From the IMG/VR virus record IMGVR_UViG_3300009537_002640, positions 62,001 to 126,000 of that record: DNA of 64,000 nucleotides. One strand, 5' to 3'. Positions 18,328-46,177 of the stretch are shown piece after piece. A model generated the notes under the pieces. It was not told the DNA's origin, made no database searches, and saw only the letters and a program-made list of their open reading frames with translations. The position numbers and the translations under genes were made by a program. Numbering within the stretch: position 1 is the first letter of the stretch; every line of letters begins with the position of its first letter.

Positions 18328-18570
18328 TTATATCTTATATTTATCTATGAATGAATTAGTGTCTTTCGTTTCTAGACAACTGCTACCTCTAGTCCAGTTG
18401 CCATCTCCCGTATATATGTTTATACCCCAAATGTCCTCGCCACTTAAAGCGTCAACCACTTTATTGGAGCGATAAATATAAGTAATTTTTCCATTACCAT
18501 CATTCTGCCCACCAGTAATAGGCGGCTTTAGTGTCCACTGATAAAGAAACTGAAGAACCGGGTCAATCAT
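18328..18570 (-). CDS. Hypothetical protein
   Basis: 80-aa ORF with an ATGA overlap with the upstream gene. Confidence 0.55.
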   Translation of the reverse strand: MIDPVLQFLYQWTLKPPITGGQNDGNGKITYIYRSNKVVDALSGEDIWGINIYTGDGNWTRGSSCLETKDTNSFIDKYKI

Positions 18571-31507: not shown

Positions 31508-31771
31508 TTACCAGCTCCCGTTGCTAAAATAGTCTAGAAAAATACCCATTCCTTCTGCTTGAGTTAAAGCTCTATCTGTCGTTGCCCAACCCGGTGACAG
31601 TTTATAGTCGCCTATAGGGGTGCCATACTTAAGATGACCTATATAAAACGACCTTGTTATCTGTTCCATTATCATCTCAAAGGTTATACCAAATGGCATA
31701 CGACCTTCTATGTGTTTAGAAAACTCATCATACATTTGGTCAGCGCGGGAGTTTGTAAGTTCCTGGCTCAT
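31508..31771 (-). CDS. Hypothetical protein
   Basis: 87-aa in-operon ORF. Confidence 0.55.
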   Translation of the reverse strand: MSQELTNSRADQMYDEFSKHIEGRMPFGITFEMIMEQITRSFYIGHLKYGTPIGDYKLSPGWATTDRALTQAEGMGIFLDYFSNGSW

Positions 31772-32945
31772 AATGCGGAATCCTTCCTTCTACAGCATCA
31801 ATTATCTTTTGGGACGCAGCAGTCCAACTAAACCCATTAACCACGCGCTCCATCTCTGGCTTAAACTTTTTCATAAGCTCGTCGTACTCATTAACAGCTT
31901 TGTGCATAAGCTCTTTTGTATGCTCCTTATTAGCCTCGCCTATTTTTGACTTAGGGTTAAATGTCCAATAAGACTCTACTGGCTTAGCATGTCGCATACT
32001 AGTTTTAATCAGCAGAGAATTATCTTCGTTCATAAAGTCTAACTGCCCACTATAGTTTGGGGCTATACTCAACAACCCGCAAGCCATAGACTCTAGCAAT
32101 GGCATTCCAAAGCCCTCTGCTCCTGTAGTAGTTATGTGACAATCGCAAGCATTATAGATGCTAGACACATTATCTACATGGCCACTTAGCAACTCTATCT
32201 CCGGAATATCCTTACCAAACTTTTGATGCAGCTTCTTAAAGACATCACCCAGGACTATTTCAAATGCCTTTCGGCCCTTAGGATTTTTCTTCATGTCGTA
32301 CTGACCATCACTATGCTTATACACTTTGGTCTTCAGTACCAAGCACACATCATCTTTAGCAGTGAATGCTTCACAATAGGCATTTAGTAGTAGCTCTATG
32401 TTCTTTCTATAGTGAGGTGCTACTACCGATACAAACTTAAACTTCTTCTTGGTGTTAAGTTTGACTTTCGGTATATCTGGATTAAATACCTTTGTATCTA
32501 TACCGTGTGGTATTACAAAAGTTTTTTCTGGCGGCACCCCATTAATAGCAAAAACCTCAGCTGAAAAGTTCGAACTTGGGAAGTAATAATCCACAAAGTG
32601 ATAGAACTTTTTCCACTGAGGATGCCAATAGGTTATTTCGTAGTTATATATTGCACACTTATATCTGCTGTTTGCTAAAAACCGCTGAGGAAAATTCTGT
32701 GGAACCGTATAGGTTATATCTATATCAATAGGCTTCTTGCCCGGCCCGAACTCTAAAAGCTTCAGGGCCGATTCTGCAAGCCTATCTTTTTCTCTATCAG
32801 CGTTGTTTGCTAACCCATTTGTGGATGCAACATAGACATTATGCCCCATTTCTTCAAAGGCATTCATCAAGCGGTCCATCACATATGCCCAGCTCAAACC
32901 GCCTTGCATCCAGGTATAGGTGCGAATATTCAAAGGTTTTTCCAT
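31740..32945 (-). CDS. Glycosyltransferase family 4 (GT-B)
   Basis: VIPHGID..FNP, RKNIELLL.AY, EGFGMPLLESMACGL..PNYSG.LDF. Confidence 0.92.
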   Translation of the reverse strand: MEKPLNIRTYTWMQGGLSWAYVMDRLMNAFEEMGHNVYVASTNGLANNADREKDRLAESALKLLEFGPGKKPIDIDITYTVPQNFPQRFLANSRYKCAIYNYEITYWHPQWKKFYHFVDYYFPSSNFSAEVFAINGVPPEKTFVIPHGIDTKVFNPDIPKVKLNTKKKFKFVSVVAPHYRKNIELLLNAYCEAFTAKDDVCLVLKTKVYKHSDGQYDMKKNPKGRKAFEIVLGDVFKKLHQKFGKDIPEIELLSGHVDNVSSIYNACDCHITTTGAEGFGMPLLESMACGLLSIAPNYSGQLDFMNEDNSLLIKTSMRHAKPVESYWTFNPKSKIGEANKEHTKELMHKAVNEYDELMKKFKPEMERVVNGFSWTAASQKIIDAVEGRIPHYEPGTYKLPR

Positions 32946-32979: not shown

Positions 32980-33009
32980 ATTATACACCAAAAGTTAGAC
33001 CGCTGTTAA
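32980..33009 (-). promoter_or_regulatory. Putative sigma70-type promoter at the start of the glycan cluster
   Basis: Minus strand TTAACA-18 nt-TATAAT, about 35 nt upstream of the GT4 start. Confidence 0.5.
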
Positions 33010-35817
33010 CAATTCTTGCAATCTAGAGCTGGTTACCTGGACTTCCTCATTATTAAACCCTGCCTTTTTAAGATAAACAGTAAGCACTATTTTTGTTCTC
33101 AATTCTGGTCGTGTTACAATATTACGAATATTGTTTGCTCTTATACGCAATATTCCTGATTCTTGCGTATACAACACAGCTATGGTTTCATCAATCGCAG
33201 CGTATCCGTCTACACTCTGGAAGTCATATCCGTCAGTGTCTTTGACAAAGGACTTAACAGATGCTGTTACTTTGACACGGTTATTTGCTAATGCTGTACC
33301 TGTAACCAACGAACCATCTGAATATGTCATTTGATTACGTATGAAGTTATTGAAGATATCCACCTCGCCTTGGGTCGACCCCTCTGGCAAATCTATAACT
33401 ATAGTGTTCACTTCTAGGTCTATAGAGTATGGATTTCCATCTACGTCTAGGAGATTACCATCTAGAAGGACATCTCCCGGAATAAATGTAATATTGGTTC
33501 CGCCATTTTGTGGTGACCCAGTAATATCCTCTTCAGTAAGTTCAGTGAATGTCTTAGGTATGAATCTCCTAAGGTCGCTAAGAACTAGATTCTCTGGCTG
33601 CCACAATGGCACGAAGTCTATTCTGAATTCAATCGGCACAAACGGAACATCGTTAAATGCAGAGTTGGTGCCTATGATATCAGGTGTAGTAGTCAAAGGA
33701 TTAGTAAGATTCTCTACAGTAAGAACCACTCTCTTAAATGAGCTACCTGCATTAAATGCTGTCCCTAACGCAATGTTCTGTTGGATTGATTGAGGGTCAA
33801 AAATGTTTAGAACGCCATCATTGGTAACATCGGCACGAATGATTTCCTCAATTGTTACAGTGCGATTTACGATTGCTGCTTTTTGATCTGAAGATGCAAG
33901 CGAACCACTCTCTAGATTTTTAGAGTATCCGTCAAGGTCGTTTGCTCGTGCTACATCATTAAGGTCTACTACACCATCAGCATTAACGTCACCGTATGCA
34001 TCATCAAATTCCTCTACCTTAATAATACGATACTTAAAATCTGGTTCATCGACATCGGGAATTAGAATCGAACCCACCAGGTTGTTTAATAGAATATCCG
34101 AGTTAGGCTGTATTATTGTAAATGTACTTTCTCTAACCAAACCAGGAAACTCTGTTCTACCCTCAATGGACGGATTATCAACAGGGTTAGTGTCTGTCGC
34201 TGCACCGAGAATGATGTTTTCATTACCCGCGTTTATCAGTGTAATAAGAGTATCTTCTGATACTACAGCAACATCTGGCACATCCTCTATTCTGGTAAAC
34301 ACAGGATTACCGGTAGAAGGATGTGGCACAGCAGTAGTAAAATTATCTTTCTGCTGAACTATCACATAGTTCTTGGCACTTTGCGAAACATCAACCAAGC
34401 TATGATGCCCTTCTACATATGGCGAAGTAATTCCCAAACCATCTTCTTTTGTCTTGGGAGATGTTATTTGACGGCCATTATCAAACGCCGTACCCGAGGT
34501 GATTCTCAGGGCGTTTGTGTAAATCTTAAACCAAAGGTCGCTCTCTGGCACATCTGTCCAGGTATTTTGTGAAAATACGGACATGCGCATTGGGTCTACT
34601 TCATTGGGTTGCGCATTAGTATTTGCTGCTTCCTGTAGAACTATTGTGCCCTTACTGACATTACCAGTTCTCCTGATAGTAAGCATGTAATAGCGACCAG
34701 GTACAATGCTGGGTTCAAGATTAGGATTAGCCAACAGAGATTGAGTGAAAATGAAATCCACTATCTGGGGCGTTCCTGTTAATGCTACACCAAGCTCTTC
34801 TAATTGCTGTTGGTCAAAAGACACTTCTGCAATAGGGGCTGGTTCAGGATCAAACTCAATATCTGTATCTGGTACCGTATCAGTAGGACAACTAGTAGTA
34901 GTCTGTAGTCTACGAATCGCAACTACCAAATCTCCAGACCAATCAAACTCTTCACCGGGTAGGGCTAGAGTGTTCTCTTCTACAGAGAGTAGTAATGATA
35001 TCTTCTGGATGTTATTTGTTGTTGCTTGAAACTTCTGACCTATGATTAAACCTGTACTATCATTTGGCGGCAATTCTCTTTGGTCTGTCGCCGTCACATT
35101 TATACGCAAGTCATTTGGATTGAGAGTTGCTGAGTCTGCAATTTCGTTCAAGAGAATATCTAATGTCTTTGATAGGGTTGCTGGCTTAAAGTTAACATAA
35201 TCCATGTTTGGCTCTATTGCCTGCTCTACCATAATCACATCTCTAGCTAAAGTCATAGGGAGAGATTCTAAGATGCGAATACGGCCACCGTTATCTGCGC
35301 TTGCTATACCAGTAATAGTAGTGTTTTGATTGCCACGAAAATCTTGAGTCATCAAAGCCACTATCTGTGTATAATAGTTTCTTGTTATTTGAGATTCGTT
35401 CGTTTCGAATGTTAGTACTTCCTGAACAAATTCACCTCCAAAGATGAGACCAAATATGTATATCTTCATCTTGGGCGAGCCATCAAGTTCGGCCCCTGAC
35501 ACATTTACTTCGAGCTGAACACCCTCAAATGAATCTGACGGCTGCAGATAAACAGTTTGATTGAATGAGTCAATTGGATATATTGGCTCCCCGTCGAAGT
35601 TTGTTGTATCTATTAATGTTTGAATTGAAGCAGGCACATCATCTGAATCAAAAAGAAGACGCTGGGTAGAGAATTCCTTCTCTACGCCGCTGCCTGCCAA
35701 AAAGTCCACTGCGTTCGCGGTCGTTTCTAACCACGCAGTTTGTTCGACATCAAGGTCAGTCTCTGATATCTGCTGACCGTCGAAGAAATTATTTCGTGGC
35801 AATATTGGACGAGTCAT
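32995..35817 (-). CDS. Virion structural protein (baseplate/fibre-associated) with dockerin-like domain
   Basis: N-terminal RNNFFDGQQISETDL resembles baseplate-attached fibre N-termini. Paired GDVNADGVVDLND / ADVTNDGVLNIFD motifs. Acidic and beta-rich. Confidence 0.7.
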   Translation of the reverse strand: MTRPILPRNNFFDGQQISETDLDVEQTAWLETTANAVDFLAGSGVEKEFSTQRLLFDSDDVPASIQTLIDTTNFDGEPIYPIDSFNQTVYLQPSDSFEGVQLEVNVSGAELDGSPKMKIYIFGLIFGGEFVQEVLTFETNESQITRNYYTQIVALMTQDFRGNQNTTITGIASADNGGRIRILESLPMTLARDVIMVEQAIEPNMDYVNFKPATLSKTLDILLNEIADSATLNPNDLRINVTATDQRELPPNDSTGLIIGQKFQATTNNIQKISLLLSVEENTLALPGEEFDWSGDLVVAIRRLQTTTSCPTDTVPDTDIEFDPEPAPIAEVSFDQQQLEELGVALTGTPQIVDFIFTQSLLANPNLEPSIVPGRYYMLTIRRTGNVSKGTIVLQEAANTNAQPNEVDPMRMSVFSQNTWTDVPESDLWFKIYTNALRITSGTAFDNGRQITSPKTKEDGLGITSPYVEGHHSLVDVSQSAKNYVIVQQKDNFTTAVPHPSTGNPVFTRIEDVPDVAVVSEDTLITLINAGNENIILGAATDTNPVDNPSIEGRTEFPGLVRESTFTIIQPNSDILLNNLVGSILIPDVDEPDFKYRIIKVEEFDDAYGDVNADGVVDLNDVARANDLDGYSKNLESGSLASSDQKAAIVNRTVTIEEIIRADVTNDGVLNIFDPQSIQQNIALGTAFNAGSSFKRVVLTVENLTNPLTTTPDIIGTNSAFNDVPFVPIEFRIDFVPLWQPENLVLSDLRRFIPKTFTELTEEDITGSPQNGGTNITFIPGDVLLDGNLLDVDGNPYSIDLEVNTIVIDLPEGSTQGEVDIFNNFIRNQMTYSDGSLVTGTALANNRVKVTASVKSFVKDTDGYDFQSVDGYAAIDETIAVLYTQESGILRIRANNIRNIVTRPELRTKIVLTVYLKKAGFNNEEVQVTSSRLQELLTAV

Positions 35818-35951: not shown

Positions 35952-38900
35952 TTACTCAACAAATGTCACTATAGCTTCTGTGTGAGCAGGTTTAATGACA
36001 TTTATCAATTCCTCTAGCAATTCTTCCAATTGCGTATTTCCTATCACTTTATCGAATGAATCTATCACTTCGACTTCGAATCTAAATATTCCTCTCTCAG
36101 CATTGATTATCGTAGCTAAGAACTCTACAGCTTCAGCAACATCATTAGCGTTTATTAGCCTTGTGGTGAACACATCCTCAACCACAGGTATAGCCGAATC
36201 TGTATTCGCACTATAATTGATATCTATGGTATCATTAGTAGTCACCTTGATTCCCTGCAATCTTTGAATCTCTGAGAACCTAATATTATCCATTCTTGCT
36301 CTAGCACTCTTACTAGCTAGAACATCAGAGCCTATATATATCTTGGAAAAGGTATCGGTCATATCTATGTTATCTACTAAGAACCTATTGACACCGGGAC
36401 GCACTTCAGCCTGCCCGTAAATTATTCCTGTTCCGTATATCAAACCTGTACCGTATCTGATAGTTCCGCGTTCACTTCCATCTACAAATAACCTTAATCT
36501 ATCCTGATTATCTGTGGAGTTCATCTTCCACATGACCATAACCCTATGCCATTCGTGACGATGCCAATCTACGTGAACTGTAATCAGGTGCTCTATTCCT
36601 GATGCTTTAACGAAGAAATTTACGAATCCTTGCGGGTCCCTAAATATACTAACTCTATCTCCCTGAGCACTCAGCGGCACATAAGTTACAACCACAGCTA
36701 TATTCTGTCCGGGTAGTGGAGTGCCTAATGTAATAGTTCGTCTATCAACATTAGATAAGCTTCCTCCAATAGCATAATTAGTCCCAGTCTCATATATATC
36801 AGTGGCTAATCTAACGCTTGTTATTTCTCTAGCCCGCTGAGATATTATGACAGATACACTTGTAGACGATTCCAAACTTTCAGTAACAGTAGATGACATA
36901 TCTACATAGTAATGAAAGTTAGGGTCACCTTTTGTATCATCTAATGGACTAACCCAAAACTCTATCGTTCCTTCGTTGGGTGTAAATACAGAGCCCGCAT
37001 TACTTAGTATTAACGGATCAGTTCCATCAAATAATGCTGCTGTTCCAAATTCCGAGTTTACGCTTGCTGCTGTTAAAACTCCAGCATTAAATCTGTCATA
37101 GAATACAGAGTCATCCTCTGTGTCGTCATCAAAATGAGCAAGAAACAAAGTATTAGAGTTTGCGGTAAATGGGTTATCTGTATTGTAATCAGTGGTTATT
37201 GAGCGCTCTCCTGTCTCTAACTCCTCACCTACGCGAGTATCTTCGGACAAATAATCTAACACCCTAAACTCATCTATAACTCCATCGAATTGAGCAGCGC
37301 CGCTCATGTTGGTTCCTATCTGGAATGTGTCAGGTGTGCCGTCAAATCCTATTCTCAAAAACGTAGGATAGTCAATCTCGTATAAACATGACCTTAATTC
37401 ATAGTCAGAGCCGCCCGTACCATAGGTTTCTAATCTAATCAACCCATTGGAGTAATCTACCACCTCAGCAAAATCCCCGTTATTTTCAGAGATAGTTATT
37501 GGATTATTCTCTTTTATTTCCACTATACCTACAGGTTGTGTTGCGTCAATAGGAATCACTGATACTACTATGGAATCGATGGTTGTCCAATATTCACTGG
37601 TGACATTGATGCCATTTTCTGTAAACAGAAGCGTTTCTTGTGTAGCGCCAGAGTATGTCGTGCCCGTTATTATAATTTGGTTACCAGGAATATCATAATT
37701 GATATTGTCCCCCGACAAACAAATTGCTAGTTTTCTACCAGCCGAATTGTTGCTTGGTTGGCAAGGGTCAGCAAAGTACGACTGAAGTAAGGTTACAAGC
37801 TGAGCACCTATTACGGTACCTATAAGTCCGAAGCCACCACCAGTGCTAATCAAGGTTCTAGGCAATATGATAGAAGTGATTTTTACGTCATCAAGAGATA
37901 CTGGGGCAGAAGCATTTACTCTCAATGTGTTACTCATGCCGTATGAAAACACTCGTTCTCTGCAGCGCTTAAATATCAAACCTAGGGGCTTAACTATTAC
38001 AGCCTCTCCTAAACCTACGCCGTTGTTTATGGTTATTACGTGTGTATGGTCATTTCCTCTACGGACAGCATAATCTGGCACCTCAGCATCAATACCCTGT
38101 AATTCTGTTTCATTACCATCCGCATCAATTGCGAACACGGCAACGTCTTGGAAGTTAACCTCTGTAGTTATTGTAGCTGTTACTGAGTTAACACTGTATG
38201 TTAGATTTCCAAGAGTTAATGTGAACGCTCTATCTACGGTTAGAGTATTGCCGCCTACACCAGTAACTGTGTATGGTAGCCCAAAGTTAGGGTCACCTGT
38301 ACCGTCTGGAGTCTCATCTAATAGGCTTAGAGTATCACCAACCTCTATACCTAACGCCTCAAAGTCCGTATCGAGTGAACGGAAAAGAGTATCACCGGCC
38401 TCAGTGTTACCATCAATTCCTCCAACTATAGGTCGTATTGCTGAAGATATAATAGTCTCTTCTGCTACATCTCCAAAGTCGAACAAATCACTGGCCTTAG
38501 GGTTGCCACCATATTTGAATAGATTTGGAACCTCAGCACCATCTACAAACAAGTGCATTTCATCTCTTTCATAAGGCGAATTGAACACCCACGATACAGC
38601 AACATGGTGTAGCTCATTAGGCTCCCAATCTCGAATATTGTGAGATATATTATAGAACCCGGCATCGTATCCGCGAGTAACCTGGTTATCATACACTTGG
38701 AAGTTTAGATAGCCAGTACCGTCTTTAAAGATGGACATACGATTAGCATCTGGTCTAATACCCATATCAAAGATGTAGTGTTCATCACCGGAGGCAAAAG
38801 CTAACCCATCTAATGCGTAAGTCGTAGTGTTAGATAATGCATCGTATCCATCTATAAATGCTTCAAATCGTATCTCTTGAATAGAGCTTGTGATAACATC

Positions 38901-41900
38901 TGTAATCTCATTTATCTCATAACCATCAGGGCCAACAGGTTTGACTACATTGAAGAACTCTCCGGTGCTAGTTATTCTTCCGGCAAATTCATGAACCTCG
39001 TTTCTATTTTCACGCCACCTGAGTTGCCAAGAGTCATTTGTTTCGTCGAACCATATGAAGAATCCCGTATCGGAGTCTATGTTGTTAGGCTCTCCTATTA
39101 CAGATATGTCTTCACTCTCAGTACTTAAATCGAATGGTATTGCGCTTGGATTAGTCGCAGCAAATCCTATGAATACTTTATTAGGGTCGGTGTAGCCATC
39201 TATCTCTAAGTCTTGAAACGTAAGTGTGGCATCATTAGATAATCCCTTCCAACCTGGCCTAACCCAAGTTTCTATTGTCCCTTCGTTCACTCTAATGTGA
39301 GCTAATGCTGGAACATCAACCCTATCACCATTGTCTACTGTGATACCATTGTCGAACTTACCCAAGTCGAATGTCTCGGTGCCATTTGTCTCTACACCAC
39401 GCAAGTGTAAGTAGTCTCTCCCCAGAACCCAATTTTGAAAAGCTGATTCAATAATGTTAGGTGTTACATCAGTAAATGCTTCTACCAATCTTTCAATAGA
39501 CGGAATAGTGGGCCCTTCAAGGAATGACTGCAGGGTTCCAGACAGAATATCTCTGTACAACTCTCTGTTCAAATTAGGAGAGAAGTTAGTCAACTGATTT
39601 ATCTGAGTTAATGAACCGAAGTTTGTTAATAACGAATCCCTAAGCGCACCATATTTGTATGTAACATAGTACTCATCTCCTCGGGTAAGAGCGCTGCTTA
39701 TACTCCAATCCAAAGCATTGTTTCCATACTCATACGACACCACAAGATTATCTCTAAGGTAAGTATAGTCTACGAATACGTCTCCGTAGTTATAGCTTAC
39801 AATAACCGCATCGCCAACTTGCAACGGATTAGTGCTTCCAAGTGTTATTACGTTTCCTGTTACAGAATCTCTATTGATATCAAAGTAGCCATCTAGGTCG
39901 GCAGCAGGCTCAGTTCCTAATTGAGTTACGCTAAAAATGTTGTTTACAGCTCGAACGTTGTTTTCAACAGTGATTGTTTTTGGGGAGTCTTCAGATAAAT
40001 CCAATACAGTCCATACACGCCCTGTACCAGTATATGTTGCAGCTGGTGTTATCAATACTTCATGTTCGCTTATTATAGCTGTAACTGTGACATCTTCTAC
40101 CGGAGGCTTATTAGAAGACCCTATTCTGATTGTTCTACCTATGTCGGACTCAGTGAATATTGCACTATTAGATATGAATGACGCATCTCCACTGGTGGTT
40201 ATTCCATCCTCTCCGCTTTGATAAGTTCCTACTATCAATGGCCTGGTGCTATTGCTGTTTACAAATCGCTCGCCCACCTGTTCTAATCCAATAACATTAA
40301 CCGTTGTTGGCTCAATGTCTCCCGCGCGATATGTTCGTATGTTTGGGTCCAGAGAACTCTGACTTCTGTATATGTCGTTAACAAGAAGTATGTTTGCATA
40401 GCGAGTCTGTATGCTCTGATGTTGATAACTTATGTCACCCAGGTCTGTATCCTGAGATGAACTGACTGCTATATATACTATGCCATTGAAGTAATTTATA
40501 CAATAATCTCCTACCTGAGCGAGCCTATTTAAGTTTTGTGCTTCGGTAGCAAGCACTGAGTCATAAAAGAACTCTCTAATAAATAAATCACTCCTGGAAA
40601 ATAATACAGAAGTATCAAAGTTTGCTCCTATAAATCTTCCCTGGCTCCCTATCAGCCCACTGTTAGCAAGATTAATCTTCAATATGCGTAGGGAAGTATC
40701 ATTGGTTAATTCATCTGACACCAGCAGAACTTCCTGCGGCACACGAGAAAAGAATGCTCGCTCACGCTCAGCATCTCTTTGTGCCGGTGCCCTTCTACCA
40801 GTAAATGTTATAGAGGTGTCATTAAACCTTACCGGAGTATACAATTCCCCTGTAGTCTCGTTTAGTATTCTGAATACATTAGTTACAGGAAAGTTTAGTG
40901 TCTCTAACTTAAACTCTCCAACCAGTCTGTTTTCAATCCGTTCATTAAGAGCCTCTACGTGAGATAGTAGCCTGAAGTCTTCTCCATCGGCAAAAGTATC
41001 TTCGTAATCAAAGGTTATCTTAGCATCTATACCAGGAATGTTACGAGTAGAGTTTGCTGCAAACTCATCAGTATCACTGTTAAAAGTAAAGTCCAAATCT
41101 GGCACGTAGACCTTTCGATATGTGTAGTTTGCTACCGGGGGGCTAACTCCAGTGCCATCGTTATCTGCATCAACTCCGAATACAAAGACTTCACCAGTCT
41201 CATAGTTAATAGAATACTCCCCTGGTTGAGCTGGCAATCTAAGAATATCGTATCGTAACTCTCGTCTAAAAGCAGGATGTATGGTAGAAAACGCCGGTTC
41301 GCCATCAGCAGATTGTGTATTTAAGAACTCTACGCCGCCCCGAAAAGATATCTCATCTAGTGAGTTAACAATAGGAGAATTGTCTAACGTAAACCTATTG
41401 ATGATAGCAGGAACACTTTCTCGTATAGCCTGACGCACAGATGAAAGTTGCACAGAGTCAGGGTCTACATCTCTACCTAATCGCTTATATACATACGATA
41501 TTCTTATCTCATCCGAAGCAGAAGGTATCTCAAACCCTCCAGCTTGTCCAGTCAAAGAGCTAGTGGACAACTCAACCTCATCATCCCTTAGGTTAACATT
41601 GATTGATGCTGTATCTGTATCGTACCTATTGTCTCTTAGTGTGTAACCAAACGTCTCTATGTCGTATGGTATTTCTTCCGCCCCACGAACTAAAGTAACA
41701 GATATAACCTGAGCTATAGGTCTGTTGGCAACCCTTATCTTAAGTCCATCAAAAAAGTTAGCTTCATCGGTATTGCTGCTTACACTCTCGCCTATGACAT
41801 CAACAGACTGTAAACTAATCGGGTCAGACGATATAGTTTCCAAAATACTATTTGTAATAGTGGAGCTATCTACTTTGAAGCTCGCTCTACGTCCAGCGTC

Positions 41901-42509
41901 AAACTCTAGAGTTGTAGTTATATTGCTGCCAGTAGGGGTGCTAGCTACCCTGAGTATCTCAAACGCTCCGCCGTTAACAAGCTTATCTATAGGGCCATCT
42001 CCGCGCTCATGTCTTTCATCAGTAACATCAATTGATAGATAGTTGGCAGACCTTGCTGTTGATATCTCATCCCCAGCCTTTTGTAGCTGGTCGGCTGCAA
42101 CAGTAATTAGATTTCGTATAGTGCTCGGTTCATCTACAGGGTATATTTCAGGTGCTGCTCTGAACATAGCCTCCCTGATTTCGTTTTGAATCTCGCCAGG
42201 GCTTGCTATGAAGAAGCTGTTCCTATTCCCATCTTCTGATATTCTGTCTCCATTTACTGTCTGAAATGGCTGAGAATCTGTGCTGAAAAAAGTAACCTTG
42301 TACTGAACATTGGGAAATAAAGGGCTAAATGATAGGCTTACAGTAGAGTCCTCCACGTCCACTGACCTTACAGTGATAGATGGAATACTATCAAACTGCG
42401 GGACAATAGAAACGTTGGTCACCATTGTGTTAGTGTCTACATCATCATTAAACAACACTTGCATTTCTGATGTAGATAAACTCAATACTCTAACAAATGC
42501 AAAAGCCAT
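35952..42509 (-). CDS. Giant baseplate wedge protein (P2 gpI/T4 gp7-like segments) with LamG/concanavalin domains
   Basis: Wedge motifs LLTNFG..ELYRDIL..GPTIPSIERLVEAFT and C-terminal LINVIKPAHT. LamG motifs EGTIETWVRP, HHVAVSW, FDGVIDEFRV, GTIEFWVSP, WHRVMVMW, MDNIRFS. Confidence 0.78.
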   Translation of the reverse strand: MAFAFVRVLSLSTSEMQVLFNDDVDTNTMVTNVSIVPQFDSIPSITVRSVDVEDSTVSLSFSPLFPNVQYKVTFFSTDSQPFQTVNGDRISEDGNRNSFFIASPGEIQNEIREAMFRAAPEIYPVDEPSTIRNLITVAADQLQKAGDEISTARSANYLSIDVTDERHERGDGPIDKLVNGGAFEILRVASTPTGSNITTTLEFDAGRRASFKVDSSTITNSILETISSDPISLQSVDVIGESVSSNTDEANFFDGLKIRVANRPIAQVISVTLVRGAEEIPYDIETFGYTLRDNRYDTDTASINVNLRDDEVELSTSSLTGQAGGFEIPSASDEIRISYVYKRLGRDVDPDSVQLSSVRQAIRESVPAIINRFTLDNSPIVNSLDEISFRGGVEFLNTQSADGEPAFSTIHPAFRRELRYDILRLPAQPGEYSINYETGEVFVFGVDADNDGTGVSPPVANYTYRKVYVPDLDFTFNSDTDEFAANSTRNIPGIDAKITFDYEDTFADGEDFRLLSHVEALNERIENRLVGEFKLETLNFPVTNVFRILNETTGELYTPVRFNDTSITFTGRRAPAQRDAERERAFFSRVPQEVLLVSDELTNDTSLRILKINLANSGLIGSQGRFIGANFDTSVLFSRSDLFIREFFYDSVLATEAQNLNRLAQVGDYCINYFNGIVYIAVSSSQDTDLGDISYQHQSIQTRYANILLVNDIYRSQSSLDPNIRTYRAGDIEPTTVNVIGLEQVGERFVNSNSTRPLIVGTYQSGEDGITTSGDASFISNSAIFTESDIGRTIRIGSSNKPPVEDVTVTAIISEHEVLITPAATYTGTGRVWTVLDLSEDSPKTITVENNVRAVNNIFSVTQLGTEPAADLDGYFDINRDSVTGNVITLGSTNPLQVGDAVIVSYNYGDVFVDYTYLRDNLVVSYEYGNNALDWSISSALTRGDEYYVTYKYGALRDSLLTNFGSLTQINQLTNFSPNLNRELYRDILSGTLQSFLEGPTIPSIERLVEAFTDVTPNIIESAFQNWVLGRDYLHLRGVETNGTETFDLGKFDNGITVDNGDRVDVPALAHIRVNEGTIETWVRPGWKGLSNDATLTFQDLEIDGYTDPNKVFIGFAATNPSAIPFDLSTESEDISVIGEPNNIDSDTGFFIWFDETNDSWQLRWRENRNEVHEFAGRITSTGEFFNVVKPVGPDGYEINEITDVITSSIQEIRFEAFIDGYDALSNTTTYALDGLAFASGDEHYIFDMGIRPDANRMSIFKDGTGYLNFQVYDNQVTRGYDAGFYNISHNIRDWEPNELHHVAVSWVFNSPYERDEMHLFVDGAEVPNLFKYGGNPKASDLFDFGDVAEETIISSAIRPIVGGIDGNTEAGDTLFRSLDTDFEALGIEVGDTLSLLDETPDGTGDPNFGLPYTVTGVGGNTLTVDRAFTLTLGNLTYSVNSVTATITTEVNFQDVAVFAIDADGNETELQGIDAEVPDYAVRRGNDHTHVITINNGVGLGEAVIVKPLGLIFKRCRERVFSYGMSNTLRVNASAPVSLDDVKITSIILPRTLISTGGGFGLIGTVIGAQLVTLLQSYFADPCQPSNNSAGRKLAICLSGDNINYDIPGNQIIITGTTYSGATQETLLFTENGINVTSEYWTTIDSIVVSVIPIDATQPVGIVEIKENNPITISENNGDFAEVVDYSNGLIRLETYGTGGSDYELRSCLYEIDYPTFLRIGFDGTPDTFQIGTNMSGAAQFDGVIDEFRVLDYLSEDTRVGEELETGERSITTDYNTDNPFTANSNTLFLAHFDDDTEDDSVFYDRFNAGVLTAASVNSEFGTAALFDGTDPLILSNAGSVFTPNEGTIEFWVSPLDDTKGDPNFHYYVDMSSTVTESLESSTSVSVIISQRAREITSVRLATDIYETGTNYAIGGSLSNVDRRTITLGTPLPGQNIAVVVTYVPLSAQGDRVSIFRDPQGFVNFFVKASGIEHLITVHVDWHRHEWHRVMVMWKMNSTDNQDRLRLFVDGSERGTIRYGTGLIYGTGIIYGQAEVRPGVNRFLVDNIDMTDTFSKIYIGSDVLASKSARARMDNIRFSEIQRLQGIKVTTNDTIDINYSANTDSAIPVVEDVFTTRLINANDVAEAVEFLATIINAERGIFRFEVEVIDSFDKVIGNTQLEELLEELINVIKPAHTEAIVTFVE

Positions 42510-45500
42510 TATCGCTCCTCAACAACAATATCCACTACGCCTGCATCAAGGTATTCATTCCTTTCAGCAGTTATGCTTAATTTATTACCACTATCTTCTG
42601 TGCTAAAGTTCAATACTCTAACTCTATCTATGCCATTAACTGTATAGAGAGTGTTTACAATATCTGACGCATCCACTGTTGTCCCTAAGCTATTAGCAGT
42701 TAAGAAAGACGACACTGCATCAACAGAATCCTGGACTACAGTTTGTTCTTGGTCTTCAAACTCAGGCAATAACACAATGCGAATAGTGACATCTATCGAG
42801 AGTGCCTTAGCCTCTTTCATCAACACGTCAGCGGTTATTGGTCTCACAACCTCAATAGCTGTGGTTGCGTCATTGATTAATCTATTGTGATTATAGGTTA
42901 CGGTTATACGCTCATTCTCTTTTGGAGCAACGTAATCGTAGTCCACAGAATATGCCGTGTTGTTTGTAGGCTGGTTAAAGTTGCTAAGGACTATAGTGCC
43001 CTCTAGCTCTCCAGCCGGATCCTTGAACCCAGAACCTATAGACACTCTAGATATTTCTTGGAATACCTTGTCCGTAACTCTGGTCCCATTTCTTGAAAAG
43101 AACAGCAATTCAGAGTCATCAGTGTCTATGTAATAAAATGTAACTCTGACGATATCAGCTGTATTTAGCTGAGCCTCTACGTTATCTGTGGTCTCTGGTA
43201 ACACAATCTTTGTGTAATTGATAGACTCATCCTTCAGGGCAACTTCTAAATCATAGGAATTGTCACGCAGCTTGTAATTCACTATATCATATTCATTATC
43301 TACTGAGGTTACAACACCAGAGCTATTTACGTTTACTCGCTCAAACTTAACCAATTTAGTAAGTTTGATATCAGATGGTAGGGATGACACCCCTAAGTCT
43401 TTTTTAATAGCAGATTGCAAATCAACCTCAAATCCAGACCCAGAGGTTACTACAACCAGAGCATCTACTACTTTGTGTCTAGTTGTACCTGAAACAACTA
43501 TGCTGCCATTGCTAGAGGTCCCGTCTATCAGAACTCGTATGTTTGAGGCAGCTCTTCTCAAGTTGGTTGATATATCACCATCGTCGTTTAATAAATTAGA
43601 GGTAGGTTGCTCTCCTAATACGGTTGTACCTATAGAGAATTGATTGAAATTCTTCAAAGCAGGCAAGTCTGAAAGTTCAGTTTCAGAAAGCAAGGTGGAT
43701 ACGTTTGCAATGTATGTAGCCAAAACTGGTGTTCCGCCATTAGATACACTTGGGTCCAGTGTTACGACTTTTCCATCAAATGTACCTTCATCGTAACCAT
43801 CTGGAGAGAACACGTCTGCGGCATTAAACCTTACGGTTACTATGTCACCATCCTCTGCCAATGTATCTGTGGGAAGAATGATAGCGCTAGTTCCAGATAA
43901 AGTTCCATCAAACCTATCTGTGTTAAATAACTCAGAACCATCACTTACGCGCTTCATGTCAATTATATTAGTTACCGTTTCGTTCACAGCAATAGCCCCG
44001 CTGTTAACAGTGGCTATGTCGGTGTCAAAGCTATCTATACTTAGTATTTTGAATACCGGGTGACTAAGTGTTACAGTAAGTACCCCATATCCATCATCCA
44101 CTACAGTAGCTGGCTCTCTAACAACTCTATTTCCGAAACCCCAATCTATAGAATCTTGCACGGTTCTAAAGGTATTAATGTCGCTAAGGTTATCAAAGTC
44201 AAACACTCTATCAAAAGGCTTTCTCCATATATAGTCTACCTGTAAGACATCTGTTCCCACAGGAAGAGTACTGCCGCTAATGAGAATTTTGCCAGTTGAG
44301 TTCACCTCATCATCTATTTCCCCATCAGGATTTGGGTCCTCAACTATGTATCGTTCGCCTGTGGTAACATTGACAATTCGACTAACACTCACAACAGGAG
44401 TGTGCTTCAAATACACCTCTTTTCGATTGGATATGTTAACAGTAGAGTTTTCATTGGTAACAAGGAAATCTTGTGTGATGTTACTTATGTCATTAACATC
44501 AGTGAAGCTAAGAGAGTCAGTTCCATTAAACGTGCCCTTAGTTGCCTCCTCGTCCTCTAATTCAATCTGATTAGATGTCCACCTTATCTTATCAAAACCA
44601 AAAGGACTACCTCCGAAATCTCCAGAGTCCTTTAGCAAGATGTAGTTACCCCTTACGCGCCCCTGGTCATCTGTAAATTGCTCTACAAAGTTAGGCCCAG
44701 AGGAACTACCTACCACTGTGATTATGTCATCTACTGGTTGTAGAGGAAGATTATCGATTAGCTCTACCCTACGTTGAGCTGCATTTAAGGTAGAATCTTC
44801 ACCCTGCTGCCCAAGTATATAGTCGTTATCAGGGTCTGTTGGATCATTCCTTCCACTAAGGTCATTGAATATAAATGAGTCTATTTGGCTCTCTAACTGT
44901 GAGCCTAATACATATATGTCTACTTTGCCACCAGAGCCAGGTTCAGATACTACAAGATTACCATCCGTATCTTCAACCACCTGTGTACCATCCCTAATCA
45001 ACAATGGGTCGCCAGGTACAACTACCAAAGAGTCAGTCACTCCATCAAGTACTTCTATTGCGTTAGTATATCCAAGTGCCGTACCAGTATTGCTGCCTGC
45101 AAAAATACTAAGTATCCTGGTTCTAAATTCATCATCTGTTTCTGGATTAGAGCCACCCGAAAAAGTTTGTGTGTTTGTAATACCAGTGATACCGGAAACA
45201 TTCTGTGTTACCAATCCAAATCTACCAATGTTGCCAGAGCTTCCAGAGGTCAATGCCTGTACAGTCACTTCAACCGCAAATGGGTCGGTGATTGTAGCAA
45301 GCTCTAAATCTGTTCTAAGCCTGGTTGCGTTAGCTCGATATACGTTTGGGGTAGAGGATGACATAATAGTGCTGGTGGTTGTTTGAAATGTTATTCCGTT
45401 GCTGGCAGTTACTACAGTGCCCTGCGGAATCAAAATATCCACATCTAGATTGTTGGTAGTAAAAACAGCTACACCTGCTGCACTGGTTCCTTGTCTTCGG

Positions 45501-45736
45501 CTAGCACCAAAGTTTGAGGCAAGGCGATTTAGGTCAGTACCAGAAGAAGCGAAGAGAGACTGAAGCGATGATATATTGCGGAGCTGTATGTATAGATTTG
45601 CCAACTGTTGAGATGGTAAATCAACAAACAAGTCCCTTGAAACTGTTCCTGGTTTGGTGTCTAGATTAGGCTGCGCAATTCTTAATGCCTCTATCGCAGC
45701 TATAACTAGATCATTGAAGGATCGAAAAACCGCCAT
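42509..45736 (-). CDS. Baseplate J-like (gp6/gp47) wedge protein with large internal insertion
   Basis: DTKPGTVSRDL, DLNRLASNFG..R, IPQGT, GSSGNI, FSGGSNPETDDEFRTR, GGKVDIYV; C-terminal RPITADV..LGTTVDASDIV..VNGID. Confidence 0.88.
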   Translation of the reverse strand: MAVFRSFNDLVIAAIEALRIAQPNLDTKPGTVSRDLFVDLPSQQLANLYIQLRNISSLQSLFASSGTDLNRLASNFGASRRQGTSAAGVAVFTTNNLDVDILIPQGTVVTASNGITFQTTTSTIMSSSTPNVYRANATRLRTDLELATITDPFAVEVTVQALTSGSSGNIGRFGLVTQNVSGITGITNTQTFSGGSNPETDDEFRTRILSIFAGSNTGTALGYTNAIEVLDGVTDSLVVVPGDPLLIRDGTQVVEDTDGNLVVSEPGSGGKVDIYVLGSQLESQIDSFIFNDLSGRNDPTDPDNDYILGQQGEDSTLNAAQRRVELIDNLPLQPVDDIITVVGSSSGPNFVEQFTDDQGRVRGNYILLKDSGDFGGSPFGFDKIRWTSNQIELEDEEATKGTFNGTDSLSFTDVNDISNITQDFLVTNENSTVNISNRKEVYLKHTPVVSVSRIVNVTTGERYIVEDPNPDGEIDDEVNSTGKILISGSTLPVGTDVLQVDYIWRKPFDRVFDFDNLSDINTFRTVQDSIDWGFGNRVVREPATVVDDGYGVLTVTLSHPVFKILSIDSFDTDIATVNSGAIAVNETVTNIIDMKRVSDGSELFNTDRFDGTLSGTSAIILPTDTLAEDGDIVTVRFNAADVFSPDGYDEGTFDGKVVTLDPSVSNGGTPVLATYIANVSTLLSETELSDLPALKNFNQFSIGTTVLGEQPTSNLLNDDGDISTNLRRAASNIRVLIDGTSSNGSIVVSGTTRHKVVDALVVVTSGSGFEVDLQSAIKKDLGVSSLPSDIKLTKLVKFERVNVNSSGVVTSVDNEYDIVNYKLRDNSYDLEVALKDESINYTKIVLPETTDNVEAQLNTADIVRVTFYYIDTDDSELLFFSRNGTRVTDKVFQEISRVSIGSGFKDPAGELEGTIVLSNFNQPTNNTAYSVDYDYVAPKENERITVTYNHNRLINDATTAIEVVRPITADVLMKEAKALSIDVTIRIVLLPEFEDQEQTVVQDSVDAVSSFLTANSLGTTVDASDIVNTLYTVNGIDRVRVLNFSTEDSGNKLSITAERNEYLDAGVVDIVVEER

Positions 45737-45748
45737 CGCTATTCTCCA

Positions 45749-46177
45749 TTATGAAATGATTTGAAATATCTCTTCTACCTTAGTTAATCTTTTGGTTGTG
45801 ACCGCAACCCTTACGTTTATTTGCCTTAGGTCTATAGGATTACGATTAATGCTAATCGGACCTATAGATGTTATTAGCTCTCCTAGGGTTACCTGCTGTG
45901 TAGTAGATTGAGCTAATTGTAATTGTCTCAAACGCTCCAAGCTTTGTTGAATAGATGTTTGAGCTTCTACCTCTATCAAGTTATCTGGATAATTTCGTCC
46001 TATGAGATTTTCGCTTATCGAGCATCCATACCACGGATGAAACTTATTTGACCCCAGGGGAGTAAGTATCATCTTGAGCACGTCCTGTCTTAATTTAGGA
46101 GTATCTGTAACTGTGCGCACAGAGCCATCCGATTTGATGCTTATATCTCCATCCACCAATGCTAAGTCAAAAGACAT
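45749..46177 (-). CDS. gp25-like baseplate wedge / sheath initiator
   Basis: KLRQDVLKMILTPLGSNKFHPWYGC; positioned just before baseplate J. Confidence 0.82.
   Translation of the reverse strand: MSFDLALVDGDISIKSDGSVRTVTDTPKLRQDVLKMILTPLGSNKFHPWYGCSISENLIGRNYPDNLIEVEAQTSIQQSLERLRQLQLAQSTTQQVTLGELITSIGPISINRNPIDLRQINVRVAVTTKRLTKVEEIFQIIS

What the first reader, a model, noticed from the sequence alone, without database searches (positions are those of the whole stretch)
33770..33996. Dockerin-like duplicated Ca-binding motif inside a phage structural protein
Seen: YGDVNADGVVDLNDVARA...IIRADVTNDGVLNIFDPQSIQQ, the two-repeat signature with a longer than usual spacer. Established: dockerins bind cohesins in cellulosomes and also occur on surface proteins of other bacteria and archaea. 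Inference: the virion may dock on host cohesin-bearing surface proteins, or use the module as a plug-in socket for accessory fibres or enzymes.
Basis: partly seen in the sequence, partly recalled or inferred. Interest (0 to 1): 0.62.

Follow-up and report, generated by a model that had tools for sequence, protein, structure and literature searches.

The report
Dockerin knob on a huge-phage baseplate protein
A 940-residue baseplate protein of an uncultivated huge phage carries a real, calcium-binding dockerin module at the tip of a beta-hairpin, but the phage has no cohesin partner of its own, so what the module binds is still unknown.

Summary
Window 33748-33996 (- strand) encodes residues 608-690 of a 940-aa ORF (32995-35817, -). 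These residues hold two 12-residue Ca-binding loops, each followed by a helix.

- **Pfam score:** Dockerin_1 is below its cut-off for this protein alone (12.6 and 18.7 bits against 22.9). All 36 cut-out orthologous modules hit Dockerin_1.
- **Profile and fold:** The family profile finds solved dockerins at E 2e-11. An AlphaFold2 model (pLDDT 96.9) superposes on whole cohesin-bound dockerins (Z 8.8; rmsd 1.9-2.4 A over 60-67 residues).
- **The carrier protein:** It is a peripheral baseplate protein. It follows a gp6-like gene and a 2185-aa gene in at least 73 of 80 related loci, and its model resembles the tripod protein of Staphylococcus phage 812.
- **Distribution:** The family belongs to uncultivated phages of 406-459 kb. 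Each of five near-complete relatives has exactly one dockerin and no cohesin.
- **The hairpin tip is modular:** One relative has no module there, and 25 have 139-271 residues between the two loops.

The host-cohesin idea stays possible but untested. The phage-socket idea is not supported. This is a new variant of a known module, of moderate interest.

The parts
32995..35817 (-). ORF of 940 aa (P0001): peripheral, tripod-like baseplate protein that carries the dockerin module
   Evidence: Translation. 110 homologues and 164 representative clusters. Full-length AF2 model has pLDDT 85.5. Foldseek top hits are phage 812 baseplate chains 9eui_Q at 5e-8, 9euj_G and 9euf_0. 9euf_0 is the 1152-aa DUF4815/ORF65 tripod protein (PMC13433997).
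33748..33996 (-). Dockerin-fold module, residues 608-690
   Evidence: Pfam Dockerin_1 aligns residues 608-679/680 to profile positions 1-53/54 of 57. AF2 model has pLDDT 96.9. VIA-align gives Z 8.8 to 4uyp_B and Z 7.9 with rmsd 1.9 A over 60 of 62 residues to 2ccl_B.
33955..33990 (-). Ca-binding loop 1, D610-D621 (DVNADGVVDLND). Ligand positions 1, 3, 5, 9 and 12 are D, N, D, D and D.
   Evidence: Read directly from the sequence. Across 141 family members, position 1 is D in 0.99, position 3 is N or D in 0.92, position 5 is D in 0.87 and position 12 is D in 0.99.
33937..33963 (-). Helix 1 (residues 619-627), the first of the two paired dockerin helices
   Evidence: DSSP on the AF2 models.
33832..33918 (-). 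Extended inter-repeat linker, residues 634-662. It has an extra helix (642-650) and the helix that leads into loop 2 (656-662). It is about 19 residues longer than the Pfam model.
33796..33831 (-). Ca-binding loop 2, D663-D674 (DVTNDGVLNIFD). Ligand positions 1, 3, 5, 9 and 12 are D, T, D, N and D.
   Evidence: Read directly from the sequence. Across the family, position 1 is D in 0.94, position 3 is N, T or D in 0.96, position 5 is D or N in 0.91 and position 12 is D in 0.98.
33766..33801 (-). Helix 3 (residues 673-684), the second paired dockerin helix
   Evidence: DSSP on the AF2 models.
33997..34032 (-). Beta-strand 596-607, the N-terminal arm of the hairpin that carries the module
   Evidence: DSSP E596-607. 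It pairs with the C-terminal arm in the module-only model, E6-12 with E98-104. P0155 closes this hairpin with no module.
33712..33741 (-). Beta-strand 693-702, the C-terminal arm of the hairpin
34504..35241 (-). Lectin- or CBM-like beta-sandwich region, residues 193-438
   Evidence: VIA-align wide search: 9euf_0 (phage 812 tripod) Z 12.8, Cwp84 lectin-like domain 4ci7_A Z 12.0, several CBMs at Z 6.6-8.4.
35952..42509 (-). Upstream 2185-aa protein with a Laminin_G_3 (ConA-like) domain at residues 1942-2027. By gene order it is a candidate baseplate arm or scaffold protein.
   Evidence: Pfam. Syntenic in 78 of 80 related loci. The scaffold role is inferred only from gene order compared with phage 812 (PMC13433997).
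42509..45736 (-). gp6-like baseplate wedge protein (Baseplate_J), 1075 aa
   Evidence: PHROG 6 at 1.5e-35. Pfam Baseplate_J at 2e-24.
31740..32945 (-). First gene of the downstream glycosyltransferase cluster (GT family 4/1, 401 aa)
   Evidence: PHROG 2170 at 2.7e-33. Pfam Glycos_transf_1. Syntenic in 70 of 80 loci.

Best explanation
**Shown.**
- Residues 608-690 of a 940-aa peripheral baseplate protein form a dockerin type I fold.
- The fold has two Ca-binding loops, each followed by a helix, and the two helices pack against each other.
- The linker between the repeats is about 19 residues longer than usual and adds one helix.
- The module sits at the tip of a beta-hairpin, so it projects from a beta-rich, lectin-like body.
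- That body resembles the tripod protein of Staphylococcus phage 812.
- The gene is a syntenic core gene of a clade of uncultivated phages of about 400-460 kb.
- Each genome has one dockerin and no cohesin.

**Inferred.**
- The module folds only with two bound Ca2+ ions, as dockerins do.
- It acts as an exposed, accessory attachment module on the baseplate periphery.
- The phage encodes no cohesin, and the hairpin tip is modular across the family: empty, dockerin, split dockerin or other sequence. I therefore take the partner to lie outside the virion.
- The likeliest partner is a cohesin-type module on a host surface protein. Binding it would add a Ca-dependent contact during adsorption.

My confidence that it is a true dockerin-fold module in a baseplate protein is about 0.9. 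The confidence figure given for this entry (0.4) refers to the host-surface attachment role.
For: **Identity**
- All 36 orthologous modules hit Pfam Dockerin_1, best 6.9e-13.
- The family profile finds PDB dockerins at 2.3e-11 to 1e-6.
- The AF2 model has pLDDT 96.9.
- The Foldseek top 26 are nearly all dockerins, with TM by target up to 0.77.
- VIA-align gives Z 8.8, 8.6 and 7.9, with rmsd 1.9-2.4 A over 60-67 residues that cover whole dockerin chains.
- All 10 nearest ESM-Atlas clusters carry PF00404.

**Baseplate context**
- Tail sheath, gp25-like and gp6-like genes lie upstream.
- The order gp6-like, 2185-aa gene, this gene, glycosyltransferases holds in 70-80 of 80 loci.
- The full-length model matches phage 812 tripod chains at E 5e-8 and Z 12.8.
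- In phage 812 the tripods carry CBM-, lectin- and LysM-like wall-binding domains (PMC13433997).

**Accessory, exposed position**
- P0155 closes the hairpin with no module.
- P0167 has other sequence at the site.
- 25 members have 139-271 residues between the two loops.

**Selection pattern in 141 members**
- The Ca ligands are among the most conserved columns, at 0.87-0.99.
- Positions 10, 11 and 14, which contact cohesin in cellulosomal dockerins, are among the most variable, with entropy about 3 bits.

**Partner not phage-encoded**
- There is no PF00963 hit in the own record or in five 95-100% complete relatives.
- Each of those relatives has one dockerin ORF.

**Cohesins in environmental bacteria**
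- 24 of 81 sampled Bacteroidales species have them.
- 3 of 4 MAGs that contain a relative of this gene have them.
Against: - No host is known and no cohesin partner has been found.
- The four MAG assignments disagree (Bacteroidales, Zixibacteria, Gammaproteobacteria, Thioploca). They probably reflect mis-binning.
- The 3 of 4 with cohesins is not clearly above the base rate.
- The module evolves at the same rate as the rest of the protein (0.58 against 0.59 mean column conservation). It is kept at one site across lineages that are only 31-35% identical. That is unusual for a host-specific receptor binder and fits a host-independent role as well.
- Surface positions vary in most proteins, so the variable 'recognition' positions prove little.
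- The window's own module is below the Pfam cut-off, and loop 2 has Thr at ligand position 3.
- Ca binding, exposure of the helix face in the assembled baseplate, and any binding at all are untested.
- The tripod resemblance is structural only. Pfam DUF4815 does not hit and hhalign finds nothing.
Confidence: 0.4

Rival explanations
1. Intra-virion structural or assembly role. The dockerin is a Ca2+-stabilised clasp or switch. It would hold neighbouring baseplate subunits together, or lock and release a conformation during baseplate rearrangement. Its partner would be a non-cohesin surface of another virion protein, or there would be no partner at all.
For: - The module is kept at one fixed site in 190 of 258 retrieved family proteins and fragments, and in nearly all long ones.
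- It evolves at the same rate as the rest of the protein.
- The Ca ligands are among the best-conserved columns.
- The phage has no cohesin.
- Phage 812 tripods undergo large domain movements and form new tripod-tripod contacts on contraction (PMC13433997).
Against: - P0155 lacks the module and closes the hairpin neatly.
- P0167 carries other sequence at the site.
- The linker tolerates insertions of 100-230 residues.
- This is the behaviour of an exposed, dispensable module, not of a load-bearing contact.
- No dockerin is known to act without a cohesin-type partner. This last point rests on my own knowledge and was not tested.
Confidence: 0.33
2. Plug-in socket. The module recruits accessory fibres or enzymes of the phage through a phage-encoded cohesin, as in a miniature cellulosome on the virion.
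For: The only support is the general logic of cohesin-dockerin systems. The neighbouring 2185-aa protein and other large tail proteins have no Pfam assignment over most of their length, so a very divergent cohesin-like sandwich could have been missed.
Against: - PF00963 is not found in the own record at E <= 10.
- It is not found in five 95-100% complete relatives of 406-459 kb.
- Each of those genomes has only one dockerin-bearing ORF, so there is no set of dockerin-tagged cargo.
- The ESM-Atlas feature search of residues 1-1100 of the 2185-aa protein gave no usable hit.
Confidence: 0.05
3. Not a dockerin: a chance or generic EF-hand-like pair of DxDxDG loops, or a decayed remnant with no function.
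For: - The window's own protein is below the Pfam gathering score (12.6 and 18.7 bits against 22.9).
- 8 of 36 modules also hit EF-hand models.
- Loop 2 has Thr at ligand position 3.
Against: - The profile, fold and family evidence all point to dockerins.
- EF-hand proteins match the model poorly, with TM 0.16-0.30 and rmsd above 5 A.
- The Ca ligands are under strong conservation in 141 members, which argues against decay.
Confidence: 0.04

Closest known systems
Type I dockerin modules of cellulosomal proteins (for example C. thermocellum Xyn10B dockerin, 1OHZ/2CCL; R. flavefaciens ScaB and group 1 dockerins, 4UYP/5M2O; double dockerin 8X39)
   Same: Both have two tandem segments, each a 12-residue Ca loop plus a helix, with D/N ligands at positions 1, 3, 5, 9 and 12. 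The fold is the same, with paired helices. Whole dockerin chains superpose at rmsd 1.9-2.4 A and Z 7.9-8.8. Profile E-values are down to 2e-11.
   Different: - The linker is about 19 residues longer, with an extra helix.
- The module is spliced into a beta-hairpin of a folded protein, not tethered at a terminus by a flexible linker.
- The two repeats are not near-duplicates: positions 10-11 are L-N in one and I-F in the other.
- The genome has no cohesin.
- The score is below the Pfam cut-off for this member.
- The carrier is a virion baseplate protein, not an enzyme or scaffoldin.
Non-cellulosomal ('orphan') dockerins of Bacteria and Archaea
   Same: In both cases a dockerin sits on a surface-associated protein in an organism or element without a cellulosome, and its partner is unknown. 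Papers read here describe such dockerins in ANME archaea and on a viral contig from alkane-oxidising cultures, with a proposed adhesion role (PMC13452462).
   Different: Here the carrier is a conserved baseplate gene of a tailed phage, with one dockerin per genome.
Dockerin-annotated proteins of other uncultivated phages
   Same: The BFVD fold search returns 'Dockerin type 1' proteins of Myoviridae and Siphoviridae metagenome assemblies and a 1332-aa 'Dockerin domain-containing protein' of an uncultured Caudovirales phage. An ESM-Atlas viral cluster of 61 members has PF00404 in 80% of them. A 67%-identical homologue, P0027, is already named 'Dockerin domain-containing protein' in UniRef. A preprint lists a dockerin gene in a 406-kb jumbo phage (10.1101/2024.01.25.577265).
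   Different: Those are automatic names. None of the papers found by my six searches analyses the module, its place in a baseplate protein, its linker variants or its lack of a cohesin.
Tripod protein of Staphylococcus phage 812 and Listeria phage A511 (DUF4815; PDB 9EUF chain 0)
   Same: Both are large peripheral baseplate proteins encoded after the wedge and arm genes. Both have a beta-rich body with lectin- or CBM-like sandwiches. Foldseek gives E 5e-8 and VIA gives Z 12.8 over residues 193-473. The phage 812 tripod also ends in a small wall-binding module, the LysM-like hook (PMC13433997).
   Different: No sequence similarity is detectable: Pfam DUF4815 does not hit and hhalign finds nothing. 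The global TM-score is only 0.13. Neither the paper's domain list nor the hits here show a dockerin in the phage 812 tripod. Trimer formation and attachment to an arm protein were not tested here.
EF-hand pairs (calmodulin-like)
   Same: Both have 12-residue DxDxDG-type Ca loops. 8 of 36 modules also hit EF-hand Pfam models.
   Different: The fold matches are poor, with TM 0.16-0.30. There is no entering helix before loop 1, which follows a beta-strand instead.

Membership tests
Dockerin type I (Pfam PF00404) | Two tandem segments of about 22 residues, each a 12-residue Ca-binding loop followed by a helix | tested here: met
   Loop 1 is D610-D621 followed by helix 619-627. Loop 2 is D663-D674 followed by helix 673-684.
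Dockerin type I (Pfam PF00404) | Score over the Pfam gathering cut-off (22.9 bits) | tested here: inconclusive
   The window protein scores 12.6 bits as a whole and 18.7 bits as the cut-out module, both below the cut-off. All 36 orthologous modules match at E <= 0.01, best 6.9e-13. Three of five complete relatives score over the cut-off.
Dockerin type I (Pfam PF00404) | Acidic or amide Ca ligands at loop positions 1, 3, 5, 9 and 12 | tested here: met
   Loop 1 has D, N, D, D, D. Loop 2 has D, T, D, N, D, with Thr at position 3 being atypical. The ligand columns are 0.87-0.99 conserved in 141 members.
Dockerin type I (Pfam PF00404) | Dockerin fold with helices 1 and 3 packed antiparallel | tested here: met
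   On a predicted model of pLDDT 96.9: Z 8.8 to 4uyp_B, and rmsd 1.9 A over 60 of 62 residues to 2ccl_B. This is a model, not a solved structure.
Dockerin type I (Pfam PF00404) | Usual spacing of the two repeats (about 34 residues from loop start to loop start) | tested here: not met
   The spacing here is 53 residues. Family length classes are 46, 53, 59, 139-177 and 267-271. This is a variant feature that Pfam treats as an insertion. It does not exclude membership.
Dockerin type I (Pfam PF00404) | Ca2+-dependent folding | not testable with these tools
   Needs recombinant protein with and without Ca2+ or EDTA.
Cohesin-dockerin system (cellulosome-like) | A cognate cohesin (PF00963) in the same genome | tested here: not met
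   None in the own 206-kb record at E <= 10. None in five relatives that are 95-100% complete. The own record is only a fragment.
Cohesin-dockerin system (cellulosome-like) | Several dockerin-tagged proteins that share a scaffold | tested here: not met
   Each complete relative has exactly one dockerin-bearing ORF.
Cohesin-dockerin system (cellulosome-like) | Binding of the dockerin to a cohesin | not tested
   No candidate partner could be named because the host is unknown. No complex prediction was sent.
Tripod protein of Herelleviridae-type baseplates (DUF4815) | Sequence membership (Pfam DUF4815 or profile similarity) | tested here: not met
   No DUF4815 hit at E <= 1. hhalign of the family profile against phage 812 Gp122 gives probability 0.3%.
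Tripod protein of Herelleviridae-type baseplates (DUF4815) | Structural similarity and gene position after the wedge and arm genes | tested here: inconclusive
   Foldseek gives E 5e-8 to 5e-6 to 9eui_Q, 9euj_G and 9euf_0, but TM is only 0.13. VIA gives Z 12.8 over residues 193-473. The gene order is comparable.
Tripod protein of Herelleviridae-type baseplates (DUF4815) | Trimer docked on loops of an arm scaffold protein | not tested
   No oligomer model was made.
EF-hand pair | Helix-loop-helix with an entering helix before each loop; calmodulin-like four-helix domain | tested here: not met
   Loop 1 is preceded by a beta-strand. EF-hand structures match at TM 0.16-0.30 only.

The most novel reading that the evidence does not exclude
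The module is a receptor-binding device. A clade of huge phages would use a dockerin on a tripod-like baseplate protein to latch, in a Ca2+-dependent way, onto cohesin modules of giant host surface proteins. That would be the first virus-host adsorption contact made by a cohesin-dockerin pair. The 'split' dockerins with 100-230-residue inserts would then be a way to display a second binding domain on the same module.
Probability: 0.25. Interest if true: 0.75.

Novelty: new variant of a known kind. Interest (0 to 1): 0.45.

Why it matters
Dockerins are textbook assembly plugs of cellulosomes, and what they do outside cellulosomes is mostly unknown. This one is an orphan. It is conserved as a single copy in a core baseplate gene of a whole clade of 400-460-kb phages that have no cohesin. 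It therefore offers a clean case for asking what a dockerin does without its usual partner.

If it binds host cohesins, it gives a new type of phage receptor contact. It also gives a handle for finding the hosts of an uncultivated huge-phage clade. If it does not, it shows a cohesin-independent use of the fold. The natural series at one hairpin tip (no module, dockerin, dockerin split by an inserted domain) is also of practical interest. It shows that the dockerin linker tolerates large insertions.

Tried and rejected
- **Deposited phages:** megablast and tblastn of the gene against 50,697 phage records found no match. The tail sheath finds only Bacillus phage G and Rhodococcus phage E3, at 29.5% identity over 18-19% of its length. 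No named relative is available.
- **PHROGs:** no family for this protein.
- **Sequence link to the phage 812 tripod:** none by hhalign.
- **Host inference:** the scan of GTDB genomes gave four MAGs of four different groups, which I take as mis-binning. Three of these four MAGs hold cohesins. Because 24 of 81 Bacteroidales species also do, I do not count this as evidence. The window has no tRNA genes.
- **ESM-Atlas:** the feature search of residues 1-1100 of the 2185-aa neighbour gave no usable hit. One earlier call failed on length.
- **Literature:** six searches found no study of dockerins in phage tail or baseplate proteins. They found only passing mentions.
- **Complex prediction:** none was sent. 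No specific partner could be named, and any dockerin is likely to dock on any cohesin in such a model, so a pass would not have changed my odds.
- not used.
- **Chance motif or generic EF-hand:** considered and rejected. See the rival explanations.
Full report
**1. The observation**

The window's - strand holds an ORF at 32995-35817 of 940 aa, kept as P0001. Y608 is codon 33996-33994, so the coordinates are right. Loop 1 is D610-D621 (DVNADGVVDLND) and loop 2 is D663-D674 (DVTNDGVLNIFD). The two loop starts are 53 residues apart. In the Pfam Dockerin_1 model the two repeats fall at positions 1-23 and 35-57, about 34 apart.

**2. Is it a dockerin?**

- *Pfam on this protein alone:* P0001 is below the Dockerin_1 cut-off. 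It scores 12.6 bits (E 0.17) as a whole protein and 18.7 bits (E 0.0021) for residues 596-700, against a cut-off of 22.9.
- *Homologues:* The protein has 110 homologues in the 90% clusters, most of about 940 aa, from metagenomic contigs of up to 481 kb. Many carry a precomputed PF00404 hit. One at 67% identity is already named 'Dockerin domain-containing protein'.
- *The aligned modules:* I cut the module out of 36 diverse members (alignment A2). All 36 hit Dockerin_1 at E <= 0.01, best 6.9e-13.
- *Profile against PDB:* The A2 profile finds solved dockerins first: 8x39_A at 2.3e-11, 2y3n_B at 3.6e-7, then 1daq, 1ohz_B and 2ccl_B. EF-hand proteins follow only at E > 0.002.
- *Structure model:* AlphaFold2 on A2 gives pLDDT 96.9. 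The order of elements is strand 6-12, loop 1, helix 24-32, extra helix 47-55, helix 61-67, loop 2, helix 78-89, strand 98-104.
- *Fold searches:* Foldseek's first 26 listed PDB hits are all dockerins, with TM by target up to 0.77. VIA-align gives Z 8.8 (4uyp_B, rmsd 2.4 A over 67 of 73 residues), Z 8.6 (8x39_A) and Z 7.9 (2ccl_B, rmsd 1.9 A over 60 of 62 residues). 26 dockerin entries score Z > 5. All ten nearest ESM-Atlas clusters carry PF00404.

It is not met. These are predicted models, and Ca binding itself is untested.

**3. What carries it**

The window lies in a 206,495-bp IMG/VR virus record. Upstream on the same strand are these genes:

| Coordinates | Gene |
|---|---|
| 61482-63938 | tail sheath |
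| 45749-46177 | gp25-like baseplate protein |
| 42509-45736 | gp6-like Baseplate_J protein, 1075 aa |
| 35952-42509 | 2185-aa protein with a Laminin_G_3 domain |

In 80 related IMG/VR loci the order is conserved:

| Gene | Loci with a match (of 80) |
|---|---|
| gp6-like | 73 |
| 2185-aa protein | 78 |
| this gene | 80 |
| first glycosyltransferase | 70 |

The full-length model has pLDDT 85.5 and is mostly beta. Long strands 596-607 and 693-702 flank the module. Its best Foldseek hits are three chains of the Staphylococcus phage 812 baseplate, at E 5e-8 to 5e-6 and probability 0.93-0.99, though the global TM is only 0.13.

The search that does not lean on Foldseek aligns residues 193-473 to 9euf_0 at Z 12.8. 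The same region matches the Cwp84 lectin-like domain at Z 12.0 and several CBMs. I checked that 9euf_0 is the 1152-aa DUF4815/ORF65 protein. [quoted passage not shown] According to PMC13433997, that tripod has CBM-like and Cwp84-like domains and a LysM-like hook thought to bind the cell wall.

There is no detectable sequence similarity. 'Tripod-like' is therefore a structural and positional resemblance, not a membership.

**4. The family and its phages**

Nothing in 50,697 deposited phage records matches the gene. The tail sheath is only remotely like those of Bacillus phage G and Rhodococcus phage E3. Relatives lie on IMG/VR contigs of up to 459 kb. Five of them are rated 95-100% complete at 406-459 kb. 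The exhaustive search of 1.84 billion representatives finds only 164 clusters.

**5.

- Cohesin (PF00963) is absent from the own record, even at E <= 10. It is also absent from the five near-complete relatives.
- Each of those relatives has exactly one dockerin-bearing ORF, at the position of the orthologue.
- A virion 'socket' fed by phage cohesins or dockerin-tagged cargo is therefore not supported.
- The host-docking idea could not be tested because the host is unknown.
- Four GTDB MAGs contain a relative of the gene, but they belong to four different groups.
- Three of those four have cohesins, but so do 24 of 81 sampled Bacteroidales species. I give this no weight beyond showing that cohesin-bearing giant proteins are common in such bacteria.
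- A preprint reports a 406-kb jumbo phage with a dockerin gene, linked by CRISPR spacers to a Myxococcota bin. I could not check whether it belongs to this clade.

**6. What the family variation says**

- *Rate:* The module evolves at the same rate as the rest of the protein, with mean column conservation 0.58 against 0.59.
- *Ca ligands:* Within the module, in 141 members, the Ca ligand positions are among the most conserved columns.

| Loop | Position 1 | Position 3 | Position 5 | Position 12 |
|---|---|---|---|---|
| Loop 1 | D 0.99 | N/D 0.92 | D 0.87 | D 0.99 |
| Loop 2 | D 0.94 | N/T/D 0.96 | D/N 0.91 | D 0.98 |

- *Recognition positions:* Positions 10, 11 and 14, which carry cohesin recognition in cellulosomal dockerins (established knowledge), are among the most variable columns. 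Positions 17-18 of helix 1 are also highly variable.
- *An empty tip:* The site is modular. P0155 (970 aa) joins the two hairpin arms directly, reading FRIIS-NTDS-TISVEKMVNP, with no module.
- *Other inserts:* P0167 has about 425 residues of other sequence at the site.
- *Spacing classes:* The spacing between the two loops falls into classes of 46, 53 and 59 residues in most members, 139-177 in 23 members and 267-271 in two. A few members show other short values. The longer classes are dockerins split by an inserted domain.

Together this describes a Ca-dependent module that is exposed and dispensable for the fold of the body.

**7. Interpretation**

- *Shown:* a dockerin-fold module at a hairpin tip of a conserved peripheral baseplate protein of huge phages, one per genome, with no phage cohesin.
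- *Inferred:* it is an accessory attachment module whose partner lies outside the virion, most likely a cohesin-type module on the host surface (my estimate 0.4).
- *Main rival:* a host-independent, intra-virion Ca-stabilised clasp or switch (0.33). The uniform conservation favours it. The dockerin-less and split variants weaken it.
- *Other rivals:* the socket idea (0.05) and the chance or EF-hand idea (0.04) are largely excluded.
- The remainder of the probability is for roles I have not thought of.

**8. Novelty**

The module type is known. Homologues and other phage proteins already carry automatic dockerin names. My searches found no analysis of the items below:

- the placement in a tripod-like baseplate protein;
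- the embedded position at a hairpin tip;
- the long and split linkers;
- the orphan status across a whole clade of huge phages.

I rate it a new variant of a known kind, with moderate interest.

**9. Limits**

- All structures are predictions, and I could not inspect coordinates or predicted aligned error (PAE).
- The own record is a fragment.
- Absence of cohesin rests on one Pfam model.

Noticed in passing
Relatives P0102, P0121, P0161, P0131, P0141, P0153 and others; G005:C1:115597-116100: 'Split dockerins'. In 25 family members the two Ca-loop repeats are 139-271 residues apart, against 46-59 in most members. A whole extra domain therefore sits inside the dockerin linker. The inserted domains have no Pfam match.
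   Followed up: partly
Relative P0155 residues 555-585; P0167 residues 620-1050: P0155 is a natural variant without the dockerin. Its two hairpin arms are joined directly. In P0167 the same site carries about 425 residues of unrelated sequence. The hairpin tip is an insertion hot spot.
   Followed up: partly
window 93-32945 (- strand): About 30 kb of sugar-metabolism genes lie directly downstream of the baseplate genes: two NeuB-family genes, a CMP-sugar-type cytidylyltransferase, a polysaccharide pyruvyl transferase, a methyltransferase, a glycerophosphotransferase-like gene, aminotransferases, epimerases, a GlmS/AsnB-like amidotransferase and at least eight glycosyltransferases. Four of them are syntenic in 53-70 of 80 related loci. 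This could serve virion glycosylation or host surface modification.
   Followed up: partly
window 35952-42509 (- strand): The 2185-aa protein between the gp6-like gene and the dockerin gene has only one recognisable domain, Laminin_G_3 at residues 1942-2027. It is conserved in 78 of 80 loci. By gene order it may be the arm or scaffold protein on which the dockerin protein sits. No PHROG matches it and the Atlas feature search gave no hit.
   Followed up: partly
G000 (whole record, 206,495 bp): CheckV rates the record 25% complete. Relatives rated 95-100% complete are 406-459 kb. Either this phage is much larger than its relatives or the estimate is off.
   Followed up: no
window 18567-19715 (- strand): A 382-aa ORF combines an N-terminal helix-turn-helix of the MerR/excisionase type (PHROGs 6620, 2474, 66) with a nucleotide-sugar epimerase domain (PHROG 540, 1.7e-28). 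This is an unusual fusion inside the sugar cluster.
   Followed up: no
L083-L086 (GTDB MAGs: Bacteroidales, Zixibacteria, Gammaproteobacteria, Thioploca): Contigs carrying relatives of this phage gene are binned into MAGs of four unrelated groups, most likely by mis-binning. NCBI names for P0074 (Patescibacteria) and P0096 (Pacearchaeota), which lie on 246-kb and 463-kb contigs, look like the same problem.
   Followed up: partly
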